From the NCBI RefSeq assembly GCF_028641065.1, contig NC_073393.1, positions 15,934,001 through 15,998,000 of the forward strand: DNA of 64,000 nt. The letters are read 5' to 3'. Both the position numbers and the translations under genes were made by a program. The DNA comes from Leucoraja erinacea. Taxonomy: Eukaryota. The notes beneath the pieces are model-generated. The model was not told the origin of the DNA and did no database searches. It was given only the letters and a program-made list of their open reading frames with translations. This document shows, one piece after another, positions 4,989-52,149 of the stretch. The first letter of the stretch is position 1. Each line of letters begins with the position of its first letter.

Positions 4989-5926
4989 CTAGACAGGAAG
5001 ACAAATTAATTGGGTACTATAGTGCAGATTTGACAATCGTGAGTTATTTTGAATGTTGACATATTTTCTTACACCACTCTTATTATGAGCCGACAAGACA
5101 TCCAACGGCGCCGATTACCCATTGCCCAATTTGTGCTCCCGACTAAAATCGATTAGTCGCCTTTGTCTCCAGATAGGTTCGAAGTCAAGGCGAGAGAGTC
5201 ATCACTAAATGATACTTTGAATAATTATCTGAACATCAGTTTTGAAGACATTCCCAACGCTTCATCGGACAGGGATCAGCCGCGGCTGGGCTCCATCCTT
5301 CAGAAGCAAAAACAAGGGGATGGGGACCAATTCGGGCAGATGCAGAAATCACAACATTCAGCGGAGTCCCGACTGACCACAGAAATGAAAGAAGGAACGG
5401 CAATTTTCAAGCCGACAACTTTTAAATCAAAGGATTGGGGAATAATCACTTTATCCAACACGCATTGGCCCAAGATAAACAGTTGCACAAAGCTGTAACT
5501 TGAGGAAGGAAACCGCTCCAAGTGGCGACATCTAAATTACAACCGCTCTCATCTTCCAATTCTGCATGTGGCGTTTCATCATTGGAACAATTATTTTATA
5601 ACAGTTCGATTAGAAGACGGTATTGTATTCCTTGATATTAACGATGATTAACAATTTATTTTTCTAAGCTCTTTCAATGCCCTCTTTTGATTTTGGATTT
5701 TTACAAGTGAATTTGGAACACTGGTGATAGCGGAGACTTGACGGAATTGTTGTCCTCTGTGAGTCTGGGGATGGAGAACTGATATAATTCTGTACCGTTT
5801 GGGGATCACGATCTTGTTATTAACAATGTGGCCAAATAGCATCAATTCACGTAGCGTCATTTGATTCTCCGCAGCACCATTTTACAGGGAATTTGAAGAT
5901 GAACTCTACAACGAAGCTTCATTCAC

Positions 5927-6031
5927 CTTTGGCAGAGCTTGATCCAAAAACAATTCTCAAGGTAGCCAACACCAGTAGAATGATCAATGTACCTCCTACA
6001 TTGCGAAGGACAAGGACAACGCTGGCCGAAC
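5927..6031 (-). CDS. Receptor gene A exon 4: transmembrane exon containing Arg (GSASVVLVLRNVGGTLIILLVLATLRIVFGSSSAK)
   Basis: Acceptor tttttacgtctgcag, donor G|gtgaat, 105 nt, phase 1-1. Aligns with paralogous TM exons at the VGG motif. Not in the ORF track. Confidence 0.82.
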
Positions 6032-16241: not shown

Positions 16242-16413
16242 NNNNNNNNNNNNNNNNNNNNNNNNNNNNNNNNNNNNNNNNNNNNNNNNNNNNNNNNNNN
16301 NNNNNNNNNNNNNNNNNNNNNNNNNNNNNNNNNNNNNNNNNNNNNNNNNNNNNNNNNNNNNNNNNNNNNNNNNNNNNNNNNNNNNNNNNNNNNNNNNNNN
16401 NNNNNNNNNNNNN
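16242..16413. other. Assembly gap (172 N)
   Basis: N run. Confidence 1.
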
Positions 16414-22215: not shown

Positions 22216-22758
22216 GCTACTGTACCATGGCCTCCCAACGTCTGTATTGAATGCTCTGACTTCCAATGTGCCTTCTGTCGGTTCAGCGACAAAGTTCCTT
22301 CTGTAGTTTGTCTCCACGCCGTCGCATTTCATAACAGCTGATGAACTATAAACCATGGCTTGATTTGCAAAAGCAAGTGATTTAATGAATGGAACGTTAT
22401 TTCATTTAAAAATGTAATTAATTGGCATTTGGTTTGAAATGAGTTGCGAAATGTTCGTGAAGTCTCGCCATCTGTAAGGTTGTATGAAAGCATCCTAAAT
22501 AAACTAGCGCAGGTGTTTAGTTTTGCTATCCGCTTTAAACTGCTATCGCTTTCGACATTGAACACTCGGTAAATTGACATATTCAGCGACAATTTCTGCA
22601 GTTTATCATAATGCCTAATGTGAAAACGAACGTTTCACTATCCTCTCCTGTATCTGTGACCTCCATCGTTGTTTTGACTGCATGCAGTAGGTACAAAGGA
22701 ACAATACTTCAAACCCGTAATTCCTTATAGTCCACAGAAACGAAGTGTATTTTGTTTC

Positions 22759-22869
22759 TCAACTTCTCGCTTTCTTTGAAACCTTTGCGTGTTTGCCGTT
22801 TTGCTTAGTTGTTGATTTGTTATTAGTTGGGAAGATGCGGAACAGCTTGTTGGCTCCCCCTCCTTTAGT
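22759..22869 (-). CDS. Receptor gene B terminal exon homolog without tyrosine motifs (phase 0: TKGGGANKLFRIFPTNNKSTTKQNGKHAKVSKKARS*; spliced directly from a TM exon it gives D*)
   Basis: The acceptor region (attacttccacag) and 5' end match gene C's last exon (attactttcgcag|AATAAAAGAGGTGGA). Confidence 0.55.
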   Translation of the reverse strand, partial: TKGGGANKLFRIFPTNNKSTTKQNGKHAKVSKKARS

Positions 22870-23817
22870 CTGTGGAAGTAATTCCATATCGGCCATTAGT
22901 CCATCGTAAAAACAATCGTTTTTATTTCCAATAACATTCTAAGGTACTCAACAATTATACATTTTAGTTTGCAGAAAGGTTATATGGATTTTATATCAAT
23001 ATTTTTCTCGATTTTTACATGAGCCGATCTTGGTCCACAGAACTATGTCATAGTTACGCGGATCCAAGTCTGCGCCGACCGTCAAACTCCCATTAACCCA
23101 AATTCTACTTTATTCTCTTCATATTGTCATTAACCTCCCATGCGCCCCCAAACTTTAGCAGTCCTCTACCAGATGAGCATATTACATGGGATAATTAACC
23201 CGCCATTCCACACATCTTTGAGATGTGCTAGAAAGCAGGAACACCGGAATATATCCACGGGGTCATAAGGAGAAGGAACAAACGTCAAACAGGCGACATT
23301 GAAGGCCAGATTAAGAGATTCGTTAAATTCTTAAACACATAGGATACTATCCATGTGAAGTACTAATATTGCACAGAGCCGTTTTGATGTATTTGTGTTT
23401 GATCGCTGGCAACCAGTTTCATCTGTCAAGGCCATGGTGTAAATTCCCATTCTGAATTTAGTGATACACTTCCATTTGTCAGTCGGATCACAGGTTGTTG
23501 CAATTAGCCGGCATGGCCATTTGGACAGATTGAAATGGGTTACTTTGCTCTCGGACACTCAGTTTCCTATCGGTTTTTCACGAGGGATACATTTCGGTGA
23601 ATACACTCAGGTGTTCAAAATGCATTGGTTCAGGGGAGGAGTGAATACATCGAATGGAAAGGTGAAATCATTGCATTTTAAGGCGCAGTTTACACTGGTA
23701 TAGCCAACTGTAAAATAGATAAATACTATGGACGTTCTGTTTAATTCCGAATAAAAACGCATATTTTCTCTTTTCTAGAAATACAATTGAAATAACTGAA
23801 CAATCCAAGGTTCTTAC

Positions 23818-23919
23818 CATGTTGTGCCGTCCATGCTAATCTGGTCAAAATTATAATCGAAAGTAAAATTACCAACCCGCCCACTGCACGTGTGAGAATC
23901 AGTCTTTTATAGGTACTTT
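23818..23919 (-). CDS. Receptor gene B second TM exon b, with Arg (ESTYKRLILTRAVGGLVILLSIIILTRLAWTAQH)
   Basis: Codon-for-codon paralog of TM exon a. Acceptor tttttcacctaatccag, donor G|gtaaga, 102 nt, open, phase 1-1. Not in the ORF track. Confidence 0.78.
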
Positions 23920-24756
23920 CTGGATTAGGTGAAAAATAAGAAACCGTAAGACATATTAATTATACAGGGAGTAAAAGCTAATAAGGCAGAGCATTGAAAA
24001 GTAACGCTCCAACCCACCAAAAAATATTGTAGGAAATACATATTGCAACAATTATGGGTTAATGTTTTAATTATCAAGCAAACGCGTCACTTTACAAAGT
24101 AGCTCTTTCTGTAGGGGATAATTGATTAAGGTTAAGAAGAGATTTATTTTTTCATATTGTTACACTAGACATCAGTTTAAAAAAAAACAGAAGCATTGAA
24201 CAGTATAATTTGTCATCGATCCACATAATAGGACATGCGTGCAGACGCCGTGAAGATGTAACGACGTATTTTAGCAATGGGTGATGTAAAAGAGGGGGTT
24301 AAGAGTGAATTCGAGAACTAGGGACACACGCACATGCCACTGTCTGCGATCATGCTCACAACCGTGGTGTCGTCTACAAATTTGTAGATGGATATTGAGC
24401 CGAATCTGGCCGCGCAGTCCTATAAACTCACGATTGTTTACTATGAAATAAGCCGCACATAAATTCAGGTTGTTAATTCATCTCAGTCGGGATGCATTGA
24501 ATGAGGTATTAGTTTTTGAGCTGCTTGCACGTTGGTCTTTCATCACAAATAATACAATTCACACTTCTATCTCTCGTGTTTGAACAACTACGCAGCTGTA
24601 TTTCTAATCTGATGTAGAACTCGTTTAAAATGCTTCCTGCATTTCCTCGTTTGACCAAATAGTTGAAACTGGAAGGAACCTTTAAGGGTTATATGTGATG
24701 CCAGGGAGGTGTGGGGCAGATGAAATAATTTTCTATTCAGATTCAGTGTTTGACTG

Positions 24757-24988
24757 ACAATAGAAAATAGACAATAGACAATAGGTGCAGGAGTAGGCCA
24801 TTCGGCCCTTCGAGCCAGCACCGCCATTCAATGTGATCATGGCTGATCATCCACAATCAGTACCCCGGTGCCTGCCTTCTCCCCATATCCCCTAACTCCG
24901 CTATCTTTAAGAGCCCTATCTAGCTCTCTCTTGAAGAGCCCTATCTAGCTCTCTCTTGAAGAGCCCTATCTAGTTCTCTCTTGAAAGA
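24757..24988 (-). mobile_element. CR1 3' end lying between the two TM exons of gene B, with a 25-bp unit repeated three times
   Basis: (ACAATAG)n tail; gagccctatctagctctctcttgaa x3 at about 24911-24985. Confidence 0.85.
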
Positions 24989-25125
24989 TAGACGGCTATT
25001 ATCAATTTTCAAGCAGTAAATAACATTGAAAACGTGTTTCGCGCTGCAATAGAATGTATCCTGTCTCTGATCAATGAACAGAACTGATACATTGCAGTAC
25101 TTGGTCAAATATGCAACGTTCTTAC

Positions 25126-25233
25126 CCGGTTGCGCCTTTAATCCGAATCTTGTGAAAAATATGATCAGAATCACAATTACTAGTCCGCCCACTACACATC
25201 CAATAATTTGTGTTTTGTCAGTGGTTTCTGGAT
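25126..25233 (-). CDS. Receptor gene B TM exon a, uncharged (DPETTDKTQIIGCVVGGLVIVILIIFFTRFGLKAQP)
   Basis: Acceptor tgtttcgccag, donor G|gtaaga, 108 nt, phase 1-1. Confidence 0.88.
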
Positions 25234-26184
25234 CTGGCGAAACATAAGAAACTGTGAACCATAGGAACACATATTCAGGAATAGAGAGACAAAAAAGCAG
25301 TGCATTTTAAGGTATCTATCCACCCTCCCTGCATAAAATATGCAATAAATACCAGATTCAATACTTCGTCGTCACATGTGACACATCACAGTGAAATTCT
25401 TTGCTTGCCTACCCAGGGTACGCAAATAGTCGCCCATAAAGGGCGCATACAAAGTACCCCCGCGCCAGGTCCCCAGTTGTTCTCCTCCCTCCCCCCTGCC
25501 TCACGGCGGTCTCCCCACGCCGGGTCCTCCATTGTCCATGAATTGTAAAGTAATATTGGAATGTACCGAACGAACAAATCACACACACACTGCGGCAGAT
25601 TGTAAAGAGGTTTGCTTATTAAGATAAAAGGATTTTATTTATTTTTACAACGCAGCGCCCGGTACTTTGGCCCCAAGTTCAAAATACCCCTGATCAATAA
25701 ATGAAGGTACAAAGTTCATTTATTTCATACTATCGGCTGAATTTCCCTGTTCTGCCAGCCATAAGCACAATGAAGCGCCAAGCTTCGCCCACGAAATTCA
25801 CCGCTGCTTCAATAATTTCTGCACAAAGATTTTATGACTGCCACATGGCACGCATTGTACTGTAATGACGAATTCATAGAACAGATCACATTATATGGCG
25901 GCTCTTTGCTGAGGTTTGGTTATTATGTTAAGATGTGTGTTAATTTTCATTTTACAAAACTACGCCCGGTAGTTTGACAACAGTTTACAAAGTCAGAATG
26001 CATTTTATATTCTGGATCTGATACCCTGGACCCGCCGCCACAGGTTCCAGTAAATATGAAAAGGAACTGGATTTTTGTGTTTGCACAACTATCTAACTGT
26101 ATTAGAAAATAGACACAAAAAAGCTGGAGTAACTCAGCGGGACAGGCAACATCTCTGGGGTAAAGGAATCTGATCTAGACCCTT

Positions 26185-27157
26185 GTTCGCAGACGATACA
26201 CACTCTATCTCCCCCTGAAGCCCAAAAACCAATCAAATCTGCTTAACCCCACCCGCAGCCTCGAGGATATAAAGTGCTGGATGGCCCAGAACTTCCTCCA
26301 ACCAAAGGAGAGTAAGTCTGAGGTAATCCTTCTCGGCCCCTCCGACTCAATCAAAATCATAGCAGGCAGCCTTGGAAGCCTTACCAAACTACTCAAACCT
26401 CATGTCAAAAACCTCGGCGTGATATTTGACTCAGCACTGAAATTTGACAAACAAGTCAATGCCGTGGTAAGAGCTAGCTTCTTTCAGCTTCGGACGATAG
26501 CTAAAATAAAACAATTCTTCCACTTTGATGACCTCGAATAGATCATCCACACATTCATCTCCTCCCGCCTAGATTACTGCAACTCCCTTTACACTGGCAT
26601 CAGCCAATCTTCCCTGTCCCGCCTGCAACTGGTCCAAAACGCCGCAGCGAGACTCCTGACGAGCAGCCGAAAAAGGGACCACATCACCCCGATCCTGGCC
26701 TCTCTCCATTGGCTCCCTGTGCGATTCCGTATACATTTCAAGACCCTCTTCTATGTCTACAAAGCCCTCAATGGGCTTGCCCCCTCCTACATTAAAAGTC
26801 TCCTCACCCATCACTCCGCCTCCAGGTCCCTCTGATCGGCCGACTTGGGGTTGCTGAATATCCCGCGGTCTAGGCATAAGTTTAGGGGCAACCGCGACTT
26901 TGCGGTTGCAGCTCCTAGACTGTGGAACAGCTACCCCCTTCCCATCAGAACTGCCCCTCCATCGACTCCTTTAAGTCAAGACAAAAAACTTATCTATACT
27001 CCCATGTCTTTCCTGACGTCCACTGAGCGCGGGCTATATGTATCTATTATGTAGTTTGTTTGTTTATACTATTCTTATAACAAATGTAAAGCACTTTGGC
27101 AAACGAGAGTTGTTTTTTAAATGTGCTAGATAACTAAATGTGACTTGACTTGACTTG
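26185..27157 (+). mobile_element. L2 LINE 3' portion with (GACTT)n tail, ending about 55 nt from the gene B C1 donor
   Basis: ADDT.LY.., VKNLGVIFDS, SRLDYCNS, LHWLPV motifs. Confidence 0.9.
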
Positions 27158-27212
27158 TTCGGATTGTATTTCTCGGCAGGTTGGGGTCTGCGTTAAATGC
27201 CTCCCGGCTTAC

Positions 27213-27509
27213 CTTGCTCGACAATGTAGCTGAAACTGGCAGGGGCTGTAAGAGATACGTGGGATACCAGGCAGGTGTAAACAGTTTTGCCTGGCGCAGG
27301 CTGCGTGTCGTGCAAAAAACTGGAAGCCTCATAAAGTCCATCCGCTGTTCTGTTTCTCACGGTTTCAATGCCGGTCAAAATTTCCACGTTGTTTCTTTGC
27401 CACATTACGTCTAATTCCATTGGATAAAACGCAGCCGTTTTACACACGAGTTGCGGCAAATGCGGTGCACTTCCTTCAATAGCAACGATTTTCAATGGAG
27501 TTGGGGGAG
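27213..27509 (-). CDS. Receptor gene B exon 3: C1-set Ig domain
   Basis: Acceptor ttgttccag, donor G|gtaagc, 297 nt. LVCKTAAFYP..WQRN..YTCLVSHVSL. Confidence 0.92.
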
Positions 27510-28702
27510 CTGGAACAATAAACAAAAAGCGTGAAGCTGCAAAATATATTTTATTTCAATGAACATAATTGTCGCTGAACCGTTGCTGCTGCCTCCTGTT
27601 ATCCGTGTGGTTGTTTGTTGAGTTTATAATTTTGTTATACATTATTTTACGGAGGATATCAAGGTAAGTAGTGTAATTGAAACAAAGCATGAATGGAGTG
27701 CTGCCTAGCGCGATTATTATGAAGGAATGTGACCATTGCTTGGTAAGATTCCGTGACAGTGCTTTATGTTGAATTCAAAATCACGCATTTCTTCTGAACA
27801 TTTTCTCTTTCTTATGTGCATATGGTAGTTACAGAAAATGGACTGCACTAAATGGCAGGAGTACATCGGCGACAACTGCTTTTCTCGAAAAGCACGCAAG
27901 GATGAACGGAGCAAACTCTGTTTCTCATTTCATATATTTTATTAACAAGACATTAACGACCATGGTTCCATTTGTGCTGGAGCCACTGTCAGTAATATTT
28001 AGCGAGCGGGAGAGTTAATTGTACCTTTTTTTGGCAATTAATTGCGTAATCACCTCGTTTCTGTTTAAGCATATTTATTTTCCTTCATTTGTGTAATAAC
28101 ATCTCATTGTACTATAATTATTAATTAATAAAGATATATTACATTTTACTCCCTGTGCCATATAAATGATTACCAAGCAAAGAAATAATATCGGAGAATT
28201 TCAGTTGTAGTTCTTTTTTTTTCTTTTTTCATTCCATGAACTTTCCTGGAGACAGTGAATGTGAAAACAAAATTATCCACCTCAAAACTGTGAGATCATT
28301 TTCTCCTCCGTTTTTAGTTGATGTGAAAGTTTGTCGGCGTGGGAAATTTGCAACTTTCTGGAAATTCGGAGTAACGTGCATTTGGTTGGGTATTTGAAAA
28401 GCTGGAGGTCAAAATATAAAGTGACCTGCCAATTTACAAGAGCAATAACCAGGGTAACGTCGCTATGACTTTTTAACATAACCCGGAGTAAATAAAACAA
28501 AACTATAACAGAACTCTCGCTGAACGTATATTGACCGACGGATGGAATATTTTTCAGTATTTTCCCTTTATTTCAGATTTCCATCTCGGAAGTAACTATT
28601 AAAATTATAGAGCTAGTTAAGATTAATATTTCCACCACCAGGAAGCTTTAGTAACATTGCAACAGAAGAACATACCCCACTACTCGTAACAAAGACACTT
28701 AC

Positions 28703-28999
28703 TTAACACAATTAGCTGGGAGCCAGTTCCATTGCCGATAAGTTGCAGTTGATATTTCACTCGACAGTAATACATCCCGAAGTCTGCGACACTCACATTC
28801 AGCAAAGTAAATGTACTGCTTCCCTTGTCTACTTTGAATTGTTTTCTGCTGTCCGCTTCCATAAATGTATTCTCGTCCCCTCGCCACCAAGAAACGTCAG
28901 CGGTTTCTTTTAATATCGGAAATTTGCAGAACATGGAATCACTTCTGCCCCTGGAGACCCTCAGGATTGCGGGGAATTGTTCCACTTTGCTCGAAGTTG
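28703..28999 (-). CDS. Receptor gene B exon 2: germline-joined VJ-type Ig domain
   Basis: Motifs VEQFP, MFCKF, VSWWR, DFGMYYC, IGNGTGSQLIVL; donor A|gtaagt. The acceptor homologous to A and C reads AC (29010-29009), so the next in-frame AG (29001-29000) is used here. Confidence 0.88.
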
Positions 29000-29214: not shown

Positions 29215-29269
29215 CTTGACAAAGCAAAGCAAGAAGACCCATGTACCGAACCATTGCTTTCACCGGCAT
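29215..29269 (-). CDS. Receptor gene B exon 1: leader MPVKAMVRYMGLLALLCQ
   Basis: ATG at 29269, 55 nt, donor G|gtatgc. Homologous to the leaders of A and C. Confidence 0.82.
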
Positions 29270-47531: not shown

Positions 47532-47723
47532 NNNNNNNNNNNNNNNNNNNNNNNNNNNNNNNNNNNNNNNNNNNNNNNNNNNNNNNNNNNNNNNNNNNNN
47601 NNNNNNNNNNNNNNNNNNNNNNNNNNNNNNNNNNNNNNNNNNNNNNNNNNNNNNNNNNNNNNNNNNNNNNNNNNNNNNNNNNNNNNNNNNNNNNNNNNNN
47701 NNNNNNNNNNNNNNNNNNNNNNN
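47532..47723. other. Assembly gap (192 N)
   Basis: N run. Confidence 1.
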
Positions 47724-51784: not shown

Positions 51785-51883
51785 CATTTTGTGCCTTTAA
51801 TTGGAGCCTTATCAAGATAATGGCCAAAACTAAAACTGCCAAGACACCCACTGCGCATCCGATAATTAGGTTTTTATCTGCAT
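51785..51883 (-). CDS. Receptor gene D transmembrane exon, uncharged (DADKNLIIGCAVGVLAVLVLAIILIRLQLKAQN); leader, V and C1 exons not in the assembled sequence
   Basis: Paralog of the B and C TM exons. Acceptor ccataag, donor G|gtgaga, 99 nt. An N gap starts 166 nt upstream. Confidence 0.78.
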
Positions 51884-52049
51884 CTTATGGATCAAGAGAG
51901 AAACAGGGGAAATGTGAACGACATAATATATAGAAATATATACACATTTAGGAATTTAGCGATAACATTTGTGATTTTGAAACTTTGATCTCTCATTACG
52001 AATAAACACGGGTCGTATCTAGCCATTGTCCCCCGTGTTTGAGCAGTTG

Positions 52050-52149
52050 NNNNNNNNNNNNNNNNNNNNNNNNNNNNNNNNNNNNNNNNNNNNNNNNNNN
52101 NNNNNNNNNNNNNNNNNNNNNNNNNNNNNNNNNNNNNNNNNNNNNNNNN
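52050..52149. other. Assembly gap (exactly 100 N, probably of unknown size)
   Basis: N run that separates receptor gene D from AMFR. Confidence 1.

What the first reader, a model, noticed from the sequence alone, without database searches (positions are those of the whole stretch)
23818..25233. Gene B has two tandem TM exons, one neutral and one with Arg: a possible splice switch of signalling polarity
Seen: a single V-C1 pair is followed by two paralogous TM exons 1.2 kb apart. Both are open, phase 1-1 and end in G|gtaaga donors. TM-a reads IIGCVVGGLVIVILIIFF and TM-b reads LILTRAVGGLVILLSIIIL. I found no V or C1 exon between them. Known: an Arg near the outer end of the TM recruits FcRgamma/CD3zeta in NKp30, NKp46 and activating LILRs. 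Inference: mutually exclusive splicing could make one ectodomain either adaptor-coupled or non-signalling/decoy. Alternatively TM-b is a relic of a partly deleted neighbouring gene.
Basis: partly seen in the sequence, partly recalled or inferred. Interest (0 to 1): 0.88.

Follow-up and report, generated by a model that had tools for sequence, protein, structure and literature searches.

The report
Leftover membrane exon in skate receptor
A little-skate immune-receptor gene does carry two related membrane-anchor exons, but the second, arginine-bearing one came from a neighbouring gene copy that lost its front half, and nothing yet shows the cell switches between them.

Summary
The two exons are real. 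TM-a (25233-25126) and TM-b (23919-23818) lie on the minus strand, are homologous, open and phase 1-1, and both have G|gtaagaac donors. A decayed copy of the 3' end of a C1 exon lies between them at about 24770-24646. Its Ig cysteine is lost, it has a frameshift, and its donor GT is now GA. A transposon tail abuts it. So TM-b belongs to a second, 5'-truncated copy of a VJ-C1 receptor gene. That copy is about as diverged from gene B as genes A and C are.

The arginine is one T>C change at a cysteine that is conserved in the family. Gene A and several short-tailed shark and ray relatives carry Arg at or beside that site. One ITIM-tailed manta protein does too.

No intermediate tail exons were found, so either TM exon joined to the last exon gives Asp-stop. 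Four RNA-seq runs gave zero reads on any gene B exon, so splicing is untested. Cross-species DNA could not be fetched. The switch remains possible (about 0.12). It is a plausible example of birth-and-death evolution in a paired-receptor cluster, of moderate interest.

The parts
29215..29269 (-). Gene B leader exon (coding part), MPVKAMVRYMGLLALLCQ, ends in phase 1
   Evidence: Read from the sequence. Similar to the gene A leader and to the Narcine P0158 N-terminus.
28703..28999 (-). Gene B VJ exon (297 nt, phase 1-1). The J-like motif GNGTGSQLIVL lies in the same exon.
   Evidence: It is 59% identical to the Narcine P0158 V domain.
27213..27509 (-). Gene B C1-set exon (297 nt, phase 1-1), donor CAAG|gtaagc
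   Evidence: Pfam PF07654 E=4.6e-9. Sequence. 447 homologues at E<=1e-3.
25126..25233 (-). TM-a exon (108 nt, phase 1-1): D-PETTDKTQIIGCVVGGLVIVILIIFFTRFGLKAQP-G. It keeps the Cys that is conserved in the family.
24989..25125 (-). Intron stub downstream of TM-a, homologous to the flank downstream of TM-b. The homology stops at the repeat.
   Evidence: blastn 25366-24989 against 24053-23691.
24756..24985 (-). Junction filler. A 25-bp tandem repeat (24904-24985) is followed by a high-copy SINE/LINE-like element whose (TATTGTC)n tail (24756-24784) abuts the C1 relic.
   Evidence: TRF. 82% match to 45137-44962. Thousands of RNA reads with loose ends at 24774 and 24853.
24646..24770 (-). Decayed 3' part of a second C1 exon (C1'). 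The Ig Cys codon TGC is now TCC (24707-24705). There is a +1 nt frameshift near 24681. It is truncated at its 5' side by the repeat.
   Evidence: tblastn gives matches in two frames, HTSLASHITL and LKVPSSFNYLVKRG.
24644..24645 (-). Dead donor of C1' (GT changed to GA)
   Evidence: Alignment to 27212-27211.
23926..24643 (-). Intron of the truncated copy, from C1' to TM-b. It shares 133 nt (66%) with the intron upstream of TM-a and 118 nt (64%) with gene C's C1-TM intron.
23818..23919 (-). TM-b exon (102 nt from the in-frame AG at 23921-23920; homology starts at 23925): E-STYKRLILTRAVGGLVILLSIIILTRLAWTAQH-G, donor ATG|gtaagaac
23888..23890 (-). Arg codon CGT of TM-b. TM-a has TGT (Cys) here, the orphan exon at 51.8 kb has TGC, and gene A has CGC (Arg).
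22759..22869 (-). Terminal exon, probably inherited from the truncated copy. The ancestral phase-0 frame reads TKGGGANKLFRIFPTNNKSTTKQNGKHAKVSKKARS*, with the ITIM and ITSM lost. Phase-1 entry from either TM exon gives GAC TAA (stop at 22867-22865).
   Evidence: Its homology to the gene C and Narcine last exons was seen by comparing the translations.

Best explanation
Gene B is a hybrid locus made by birth-and-death evolution in a tandem cluster of non-rearranging VJ-C1-TM immune receptor genes.

Origin (shown): two old paralogous copies once lay head to tail. I call them B1 and B2. A deletion with a transposon at the junction removed the rest of B1 beyond 137 nt of the intron after TM-a. It also removed B2's leader, its V exon and most of its C1 exon. 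What remains is B1's leader-V-C1-TM-a, then a dead C1 stump, B2's intron, B2's TM exon (TM-b) and a single ITIM-less last exon.

What B2 was (inferred): TM-b carries Arg where the family normally has a conserved Cys, through a one-base change. This marks B2 as an activating-type, short-tailed member like gene A.

What happens now (inferred): TM-b still has usable splice sites, so a gene B transcript could skip it, include it, or include both TM exons. Either TM exon joined to the last exon gives a tail of about ten residues ending in Asp-stop. I think it most likely that TM-b is a leftover and not one arm of a regulated, mutually exclusive switch.
For: - A C1 3' fragment lies in the right order, orientation and spacing upstream of TM-b. 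It has a lost Cys, a frameshift confirmed by tblastn matches in two frames, and a GT>GA donor.
- The relic is as far from gene B's C1 (56/77) as from gene C's (54/74) and gene A's (52/78).
- dS between TM-a and TM-b is 0.85, against 0.72-1.0 between the separate genes.
- The intron before TM-b shares one patch with gene B's intron and another with gene C's.
- A repeat sits exactly at the junction.
- Only three V and three complete C1 exons exist in the window.
- No middle tail exons lie between TM-b and the last exon.
- Partial 3' or internal duplications recur in the family. The S. canicula P0149 model has (TM+tail) twice, and A. radiata P0004 has a doubled C1.
- The closest annotated relative, the Narcine gene, has a single TM exon.
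- No gene B reads appear in four RNA-seq runs.
Against: - TM-b has no stop and no indel, its extended donor gtaagaac is identical to TM-a's, and it has a clean pyrimidine tract with an in-frame AG. Its flanks show 10 gap openings in 251 nt.
- A neutral-decay simulation gave about 0.035 for that degree of preservation if TM-b had been neutral ever since it diverged from TM-a. dN/dS between TM-a and TM-b is 0.38.
- This constraint could reflect present use. It is equally explained if B2 was a working gene for most of that time.
- An intragenic tandem duplication would leave the same layout as a deletion between two genes.
- The RNA runs are of unknown tissue and only 5-25% of each was read, so silence there proves little.
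Confidence: 0.6

Rival explanations
1. C1 splices to either TM-a or TM-b, never both. One ectodomain is then made either as a neutral-TM, non-signalling form or as an Arg-TM form that recruits an FcRgamma/CD3zeta-type adaptor.
For: - Both exons are open, share the same phase and have good splice sites.
- TM-b is better preserved than its flanks.
- Arg at or beside this site goes with short ITIM-less tails in gene A and in P0049, P0050, P0066, P0126 and P0163.
- The Narcine relative shows annotated alternative splicing at its TM exon, by skipping or by an internal acceptor.
Against: - No transcript evidence at all.
- Both exons are multiples of 3 and 1.2 kb apart, so nothing obvious prevents joint inclusion.
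- TM-b arrived with a dead C1 stump, as leftover of another gene copy.
- The Arg is a single T>C change and also occurs with an ITIM tail in P0164.
- The Narcine relative has one TM exon only.
Confidence: 0.12
2. TM-b is the working anchor. TM-a is skipped or is itself the decaying exon, and gene B is an ordinary activating-type receptor with an Arg TM and a very short tail.
For: - The tail has lost its ITIM and ITSM, and the middle tail exons are gone. That fits an activating member.
- Gene A next door has the same R-x-V-G-G layout.
- Mobula hypostoma P0163 ends right after an Arg-type TM exon.
Against: TM-a is equally intact, lies first, and uses the acceptor position seen in the Narcine protein. 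No RNA data.
Confidence: 0.13
3. Both TM exons are spliced in together. The product is a hairpin anchor: TM-a, the cytoplasmic loop TRFGLKAQPESTYKR, then TM-b, with the C-terminus outside the cell and no signalling tail.
For: Exon definition would include two competent exons by default. The frame is kept (108 + 102 nt). The loop is net positive, which fits the positive-inside rule (read). The S. canicula model P0149 includes two TM segments in one predicted protein.
Against: No precedent as a working design in this family. P0149 is an automatic model. No RNA data.
Confidence: 0.1
4. The layout is an assembly artefact, with two separate genes collapsed at a repeat.
For: The junction lies in a high-copy repeat.
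Against: The two copies are about 31% diverged, so collapse is unlikely. Three runs of kind unrecorded (presumably DNA), which may include the window's own source sample, hold 53-64% of the stretch's sampled words.
Confidence: 0.03

Closest known systems
Cartilaginous-fish VJ-C1-TM receptors, auto-annotated as 'SIRP-alpha-like', 'NCR3 ligand 1-like' or 'tapasin-related-like'. The nearest is the Narcine bancroftii gene with isoforms XP_069757172-78.
   Same: Same exon plan: leader, germline-joined VJ, C1, a phase 1-1 TM exon, then tyrosine-motif tail exons. The C1 domain is 56-67% identical. The last exon ends in the same ...ARS stop.
   Different: The Narcine gene has one TM exon and an intact LTYASL tail. 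Gene B has a second TM exon behind a dead C1 stump, no middle tail exons and no ITIM.
[quoted passage not shown] These are non-rearranging VJ-C1-TM-ITIM genes of birds and other non-mammals. My description rests on my own knowledge. PMC10751288 mentions the family and cites Fu et al. 2019.
   Same: A non-rearranging VJ exon, one C1 domain, a TM segment and an ITIM-type tail in the inhibitory members (gene C here).
   Different: Here the family also has Arg-TM, short-tailed members.
SIRP-alpha/SIRP-beta and other paired receptors (KIR, LILR, PILR, Siglec-5/14). This includes hybrid genes made by deletion between neighbours, such as the human SIGLEC14/5 fusion allele (own knowledge).
   Same: A cluster with ITIM-tailed (gene C) and basic-TM, short-tailed (gene A, TM-b) versions of similar ectodomains. 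A deletion joins the front of one member to the back of the next.
   Different: Two Ig domains (VJ + C1) and not V-C1-C1. Arg near the outer end of the TM and not a mid-membrane Lys. The skate hybrid keeps both TM exons.
NKp30 (NCR3)
   Same: A VJ-type V domain. An Arg in the membrane span in the activating-type members. Human NKp30 changes signalling output through alternatively spliced tail exons (own knowledge).
   Different: NKp30 has no C1 domain, and its splice variants differ in the tail, not in the TM exon. The HMMER hits here are SIRP-like or B7-H6-like by automatic name, not NCR3.
Mutually exclusive exons born by tandem exon duplication, for example the membrane-segment exons of CACNA1C and SCN8A, or FGFR2 IIIb/IIIc (own knowledge)
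   Same: Two adjacent homologous exons of the same phase and near-equal length that encode a membrane span.
   Different: Here the duplicate arrived with a fragment of the preceding exon. It is as old as the gene paralogues, and there is no transcript evidence for exclusive use.

Membership tests
Cartilaginous-fish VJ-C1-TM receptor family (SIRP-alpha-like / PRARP-like) | V domain with the J-like G-x-G-T/S motif encoded in one germline exon | tested here: met
   Exon 28999-28703 reads ...YYCRVKYQLQLIGNGTGSQLIVL. Ig-domain Pfam hits.
Cartilaginous-fish VJ-C1-TM receptor family (SIRP-alpha-like / PRARP-like) | One C1-set domain following the V domain | tested here: met
   PF07654 E=4.6e-9. phmmer gives 133 hits at E<=1e-10, the best being V-C1-TM proteins of rays and sharks.
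Cartilaginous-fish VJ-C1-TM receptor family (SIRP-alpha-like / PRARP-like) | Single membrane span on its own phase 1-1 exon with the G-C-x-V-G-G type motif | tested here: met
   TM-a reads IIGCVVGG. TM-b reads LTRAVGG, with the Cys replaced by Arg.
Cartilaginous-fish VJ-C1-TM receptor family (SIRP-alpha-like / PRARP-like) | ITIM/ITSM tail (inhibitory members) | tested here: not met
   The gene B last exon reads LFRIFP where gene C has LTYATV. The middle tail exons were not found. Gene B is therefore a tail-less or activating-type member at best.
Mutually exclusive alternative exon pair | Two adjacent homologous exons with the same phase and competent splice sites | tested here: met
   108 and 102 nt, both phase 1-1, donors G|gtaagaac, pyrimidine tracts present.
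Mutually exclusive alternative exon pair | Transcripts contain one exon or the other, not both | tested here: inconclusive
   Zero depth on all gene B exons in four RNA-seq runs, so no junctions could be seen.
Mutually exclusive alternative exon pair | Both exons retained in related species | not testable with these tools
A protein search with the TM-b ORF found nothing. The Narcine relative has one TM exon in all five isoforms.
Activating immunoreceptor coupled through a TM arginine (NKp30/NKp46/LILRA type) | Basic residue in the outer third of the membrane span | tested here: met
   In TM-b the Arg (23890-23888) is the fifth residue of LILTRAVGGLVILLSIIIL. Gene A has Arg at the same position. 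It could also lie at the interface, because only 15 apolar residues follow it.
Activating immunoreceptor coupled through a TM arginine (NKp30/NKp46/LILRA type) | Short cytoplasmic tail without an ITIM | tested here: met
   A direct splice gives ...TRLAWTAQHD-stop. The ancestral-frame tail also lacks an ITIM. This is inferred from the DNA, not from cDNA.
Activating immunoreceptor coupled through a TM arginine (NKp30/NKp46/LILRA type) | Physical association with FcRgamma, CD3zeta or DAP12 | not testable with these tools
   Needs co-immunoprecipitation or surface-expression assays.
NCR3 (NKp30) orthologue | Ectodomain made of a single VJ domain without a C1 domain | tested here: not met
   Gene B has a C1 exon. 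I do not file it as NCR3.

The most novel reading that the evidence does not exclude
A deletion fused an inhibitory-lineage receptor to the back half of its activating neighbour, and the hybrid kept both membrane exons. Skate leukocytes now choose between them. The same ligand-binding head is then displayed either uncoupled (Cys-type TM-a) or coupled to an ITAM adaptor (Arg-type TM-b). I know of no immune receptor described as working this way.
Probability: 0.12. Interest if true: 0.8.

Novelty: new member of a known kind. Interest (0 to 1): 0.33.

Why it matters
Paired activating and inhibitory receptors are thought to arise again and again by gene duplication, tail loss and gain of a charged membrane residue. 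This locus shows those steps side by side in one of the oldest jawed-vertebrate lineages:
- an ITIM-bearing gene (gene C);
- an Arg-TM gene (gene A);
- a hybrid that holds both a Cys-type and an Arg-type membrane exon one base change apart, with its ITIM tail gone.

If the two exons were really used alternatively, it would be a new way of setting receptor polarity. As it stands, the locus is a clear record of birth-and-death evolution. It also warns that an open exon with good splice sites is not proof of alternative splicing.

Tried and rejected
- RNA evidence. The run search offered only runs of the same species label. I laid four raw-read RNA runs (X8, X12, X15, X11) on 22500-28499. Only repeats were covered and every gene B exon had zero depth. 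This gives no support either way.
A protein search with the TM-b ORF found nothing. A search with the closest full-length relative (Narcine P0005) returned no skate gene B product.
- Middle tail exons in gene B. I tried local DNA and protein alignments with the gene C, gene A and Narcine tail exons, and a scan for AG...GT exons of the right phase. Nothing exceeded the shuffled controls.
- 'Lost acceptor means a dead exon'. Rejected, because acceptor position varies among working family members.
- 'Preservation proves present use'. The neutral-decay simulation gave about 0.035. I set it aside once the relic and the dS values showed that TM-b probably belonged to a complete gene for most of its history.
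- A 2x2 count of a basic residue in the outer TM against an ITIM tail was too noisy to quote as a test, because juxtamembrane K/R residues were also counted. I give the individual cases instead.
- The Kinlein 2021 and Flajnik 2012 papers on shark NCR3 were not held. The PRARP papers were not in the library.
All searches were exon by exon, by reference.
- The N runs (16242-16413, 47532-47723, 52050-52149) were left untouched.

Full report
**What is there**

The window is little-skate DNA (earlier notes). On the minus strand it holds a tandem cluster of non-rearranging VJ-C1-TM immunoglobulin-superfamily receptor genes.

Six-frame reading, tblastn and Pfam show three VJ exons and three complete C1 exons:
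- gene A: V 12037-11684, C1 9200-8892
- gene B: V 28999-28703, C1 27509-27213
- gene C: V 42739-42350, C1 40039-39716

There are also five TM exons:
- gene A, about 6031-5926
- TM-a, 25233-25126
- TM-b, 23919-23818
- gene C, about 39196-39098
- an orphan at 51890-51785, which lies 158 nt from an assembly gap

Gene C has an inhibitory tail with LTYATV and TVYADV. Gene A has an Arg in its membrane span and no ITIM.

**Check of the observation**

TM-a and TM-b are as described. Both are open and phase 1-1, and both have donors G|gtaagaac. The peptides are IIGCVVGGLVIVILIIFF and LILTRAVGGLVILLSIIIL. TM-a is 108 nt, not 102.

The exons are 74/108 nt and 17/35 aa identical. The homology runs 133 nt upstream and about 130 nt downstream (blastn 63.6% over 382 nt, E=8e-30).

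The AG used by TM-a is CTA in TM-b. TM-b has an in-frame AG 6 nt further on, behind a clean pyrimidine tract. Annotated relatives place this acceptor at different points, 14 to 17 residues from the exon's first residue through the GG of the xVGG motif. The shift is therefore not a defect.

A self-comparison of the gene B region, and a comparison with gene C, found a copy of the 3' end of a C1 exon between the two TM exons. The copy includes its donor and the start of the following intron.
- 24712-24597 matches 27278-27165 at 80/117 nt.
- 24712-24459 matches gene C 39792-39516.

The fragment is dead in three ways. The Ig cysteine codon TGC is TCC (24707-24705). One extra base near 24681 shifts the frame, and tblastn finds HTSLASHITL and LKVPSSFNYLVKRG in two different frames. 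The donor GT is GA (24645-24644).

On its 5' side the fragment is cut off by a high-copy repeat. The repeat's (TATTGTC)n tail lies at 24756-24784, and a 25-bp tandem repeat lies at 24904-24985. The RNA runs pile thousands of reads on this element.

Upstream of the repeat, the flank of TM-a is still homologous to the flank of TM-b for 137 nt. So TM-b sits in the normal context of a gene copy: C1, an intron of about 720 nt, then the TM exon. Everything upstream of mid-C1 in that copy is gone.

**How old is the second copy**

The C1 stump is no closer to gene B's C1 (56/77) than to gene C's (54/74) or gene A's (52/78). dS between TM-a and TM-b is 0.85, within the range between the separate genes, which is 0.72-1.0 (only 35 codons, so noisy).

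The intron before TM-b shares one patch with gene B's intron and another with gene C's.

The simplest reading is an old, once complete neighbour gene that I call B2. A deletion with a transposon at the junction removed its front. The same deletion removed everything of B1 beyond 137 nt of the intron after TM-a. An intragenic tandem duplication of the segment 'C1 end to TM exon' would leave the same layout. I cannot exclude that, but the paralogue-level divergence fits it less well.

**Is TM-b still under selection**

Taken at face value, TM-b is better preserved than its surroundings. It has no indel in 108 nt, against 10 gap openings in 251 nt of flank. It has no stop, and its 8-nt donor is identical to TM-a's. 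dN/dS is 0.38.

A neutral-decay simulation gave about 0.035 for this degree of preservation. That test assumes TM-b has been neutral ever since it split from TM-a. If B2 was a working gene until the deletion, only the time since then counts. The C1 stump is only about 5% more diverged than intact paralogue pairs are from each other. A few substitutions in 108 nt would usually leave an exon looking intact. The preservation therefore does not show present use.

**The arginine**

TM-b has CGT where TM-a has TGT, the orphan exon has TGC and gene A has CGC.

Across about 80 homologues, a Cys two residues before the V-G-G motif is typical of ITIM-tailed members. Arg at or beside that Cys occurs in short-tailed, ITIM-less proteins:
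- Hypanus P0049
- Hemitrygon P0050
- Heterodontus P0066
- Scyliorhinus P0126
- Mobula hypostoma P0163, which ends right after the TM exon

It also occurs in gene A. This supports reading TM-b as an activating-type span.

There are two caveats. Mobula birostris P0164 combines the same E-R-A-A-G-G with a full ITIM/ITSM tail. Also, only 15 apolar residues follow the Arg in TM-b, so it may sit at the membrane interface.

**The tail**

The last exon (22869-22759) is homologous to the last exons of gene C and of the Narcine relative. Both it and the Narcine exon end in ARS-stop. However, LTYATV has become LFRIFP and the ITSM is gone.

The last exon is phase 0 in its ancestral frame, while both TM exons end in phase 1. 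The two middle tail exons that bridge this in gene C could not be found in gene B. Joining either TM exon directly to the last exon gives GAC TAA. That is a cytoplasmic tail of about ten residues ending in Asp.

**Expression**

The run search offered only raw-read RNA runs of the same species label. I laid four of them on 22500-28499, reading 1.1-1.9 billion letters from each. They gave zero depth on the C1 exon, TM-a, TM-b and the last exon. Only repeats were covered.

The tissues are unknown to me, so this says nothing about immune cells. No gene B product was found in the protein collection. A search with the closest full-length relative found only ray proteins. The one 100% hit is an ORF artefact from a 1.7-kb contig.

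A search with the TM-b ORF found nothing.

**Relatives**

The nearest annotated gene is in Narcine bancroftii (P0158 and its isoforms). It has one TM exon, DSKSTYESLIFPCIVGG..., which shares features with both TM-a (the Cys) and TM-b (STY and IIILT). Its predicted isoforms skip the TM exon or use an internal acceptor. Splicing variation at this exon is thus plausible in the family, but a two-exon choice is not seen there.

Partial duplications are common in the family:
- a Scyliorhinus model has (TM + tail) twice (P0149)
- an Amblyraja model has a doubled C1 (P0004)

**Verdict**

The exons are real, and the Arg-bearing one is of an activating type known in this family. The splice switch is neither supported nor excluded; I put it at about 0.12.

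Nothing in the sequence enforces mutual exclusivity. Skipping TM-b, including it, or including both exons as an in-frame hairpin all remain possible. The locus is an instructive case of birth-and-death evolution in a paired-receptor cluster. On present evidence it is not a new signalling mechanism.

Noticed in passing
window 51785-51892 (minus): An orphan TM exon of the same family, ...DADKNLIIGCAVGVLAVLVLAIILIRLQLKAQN, donor G|gtgaga. It has an in-frame TAA near its 5' end and a possible acceptor 15 nt further in. No V or C1 exon lies upstream in the window. A 100-N gap (52050-52149) lies 158 nt away, so it may be another truncated copy or its front may lie in the gap.
   Followed up: partly
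window 5926-6031 (minus): The gene A TM exon reads SASVVLVLRNVGGTLIILLVLATLRIVFGSSSAK. Its Arg is at the same R-x-V-G-G position as in TM-b, and the tail (about 4987-4813) has no ITIM. This is an activating-type partner in the same cluster.
   Followed up: partly
family proteins P0008, P0009, P0023, P0028, P0038, P0053, P0064, P0069, P0155 and others: A cysteine at the outer end of the membrane span (G-C-A-x-G-G) is conserved in ITIM-tailed members from sharks, rays and skates. Its role is unknown; it could be an interchain disulfide or an acylation site.
   Followed up: no
P0164 (Mobula birostris) against P0010 and P0163 (Mobula hypostoma): Proteins more than 90% identical differ by Cys against Arg at the same TM position. 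They carry long ITIM, medium or near-absent tails. This is a Cys/Arg toggle at this site in manta rays, including an Arg + ITIM combination that recalls chicken CHIR-AB or human KIR2DL4.
   Followed up: partly
P0149 (Scyliorhinus canicula XP_038661939.1) and P0004 (Amblyraja radiata XP_032892405.1): Automatic gene models with a duplicated TM-plus-tail block and with a duplicated C1 domain, respectively. Internal segmental duplications seem frequent in this family and may be merged into single models.
   Followed up: no
Narcine bancroftii isoforms P0158, P0151, P0160, P0005, P0159: Predicted isoforms of the closest relative skip the TM exon (a possibly soluble form with the ITIM tail still in frame) or start 14 residues into it.
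   Followed up: partly
window 24148 (minus): An AATAAA lies between TM-a and TM-b. If the TM-a donor were not used, read-through would stay open for a further 60 codons and could end here. This was not tested.
   Followed up: no
P0003, P0006, P0011 and other hits of 900-2100 aa: Very long proteins with 4-10 C1-like repeats also match the gene B C1 domain at 25-36% identity. They may be UrIg/UrIg2-like molecules (compare PMC12227049). Not examined.
   Followed up: no
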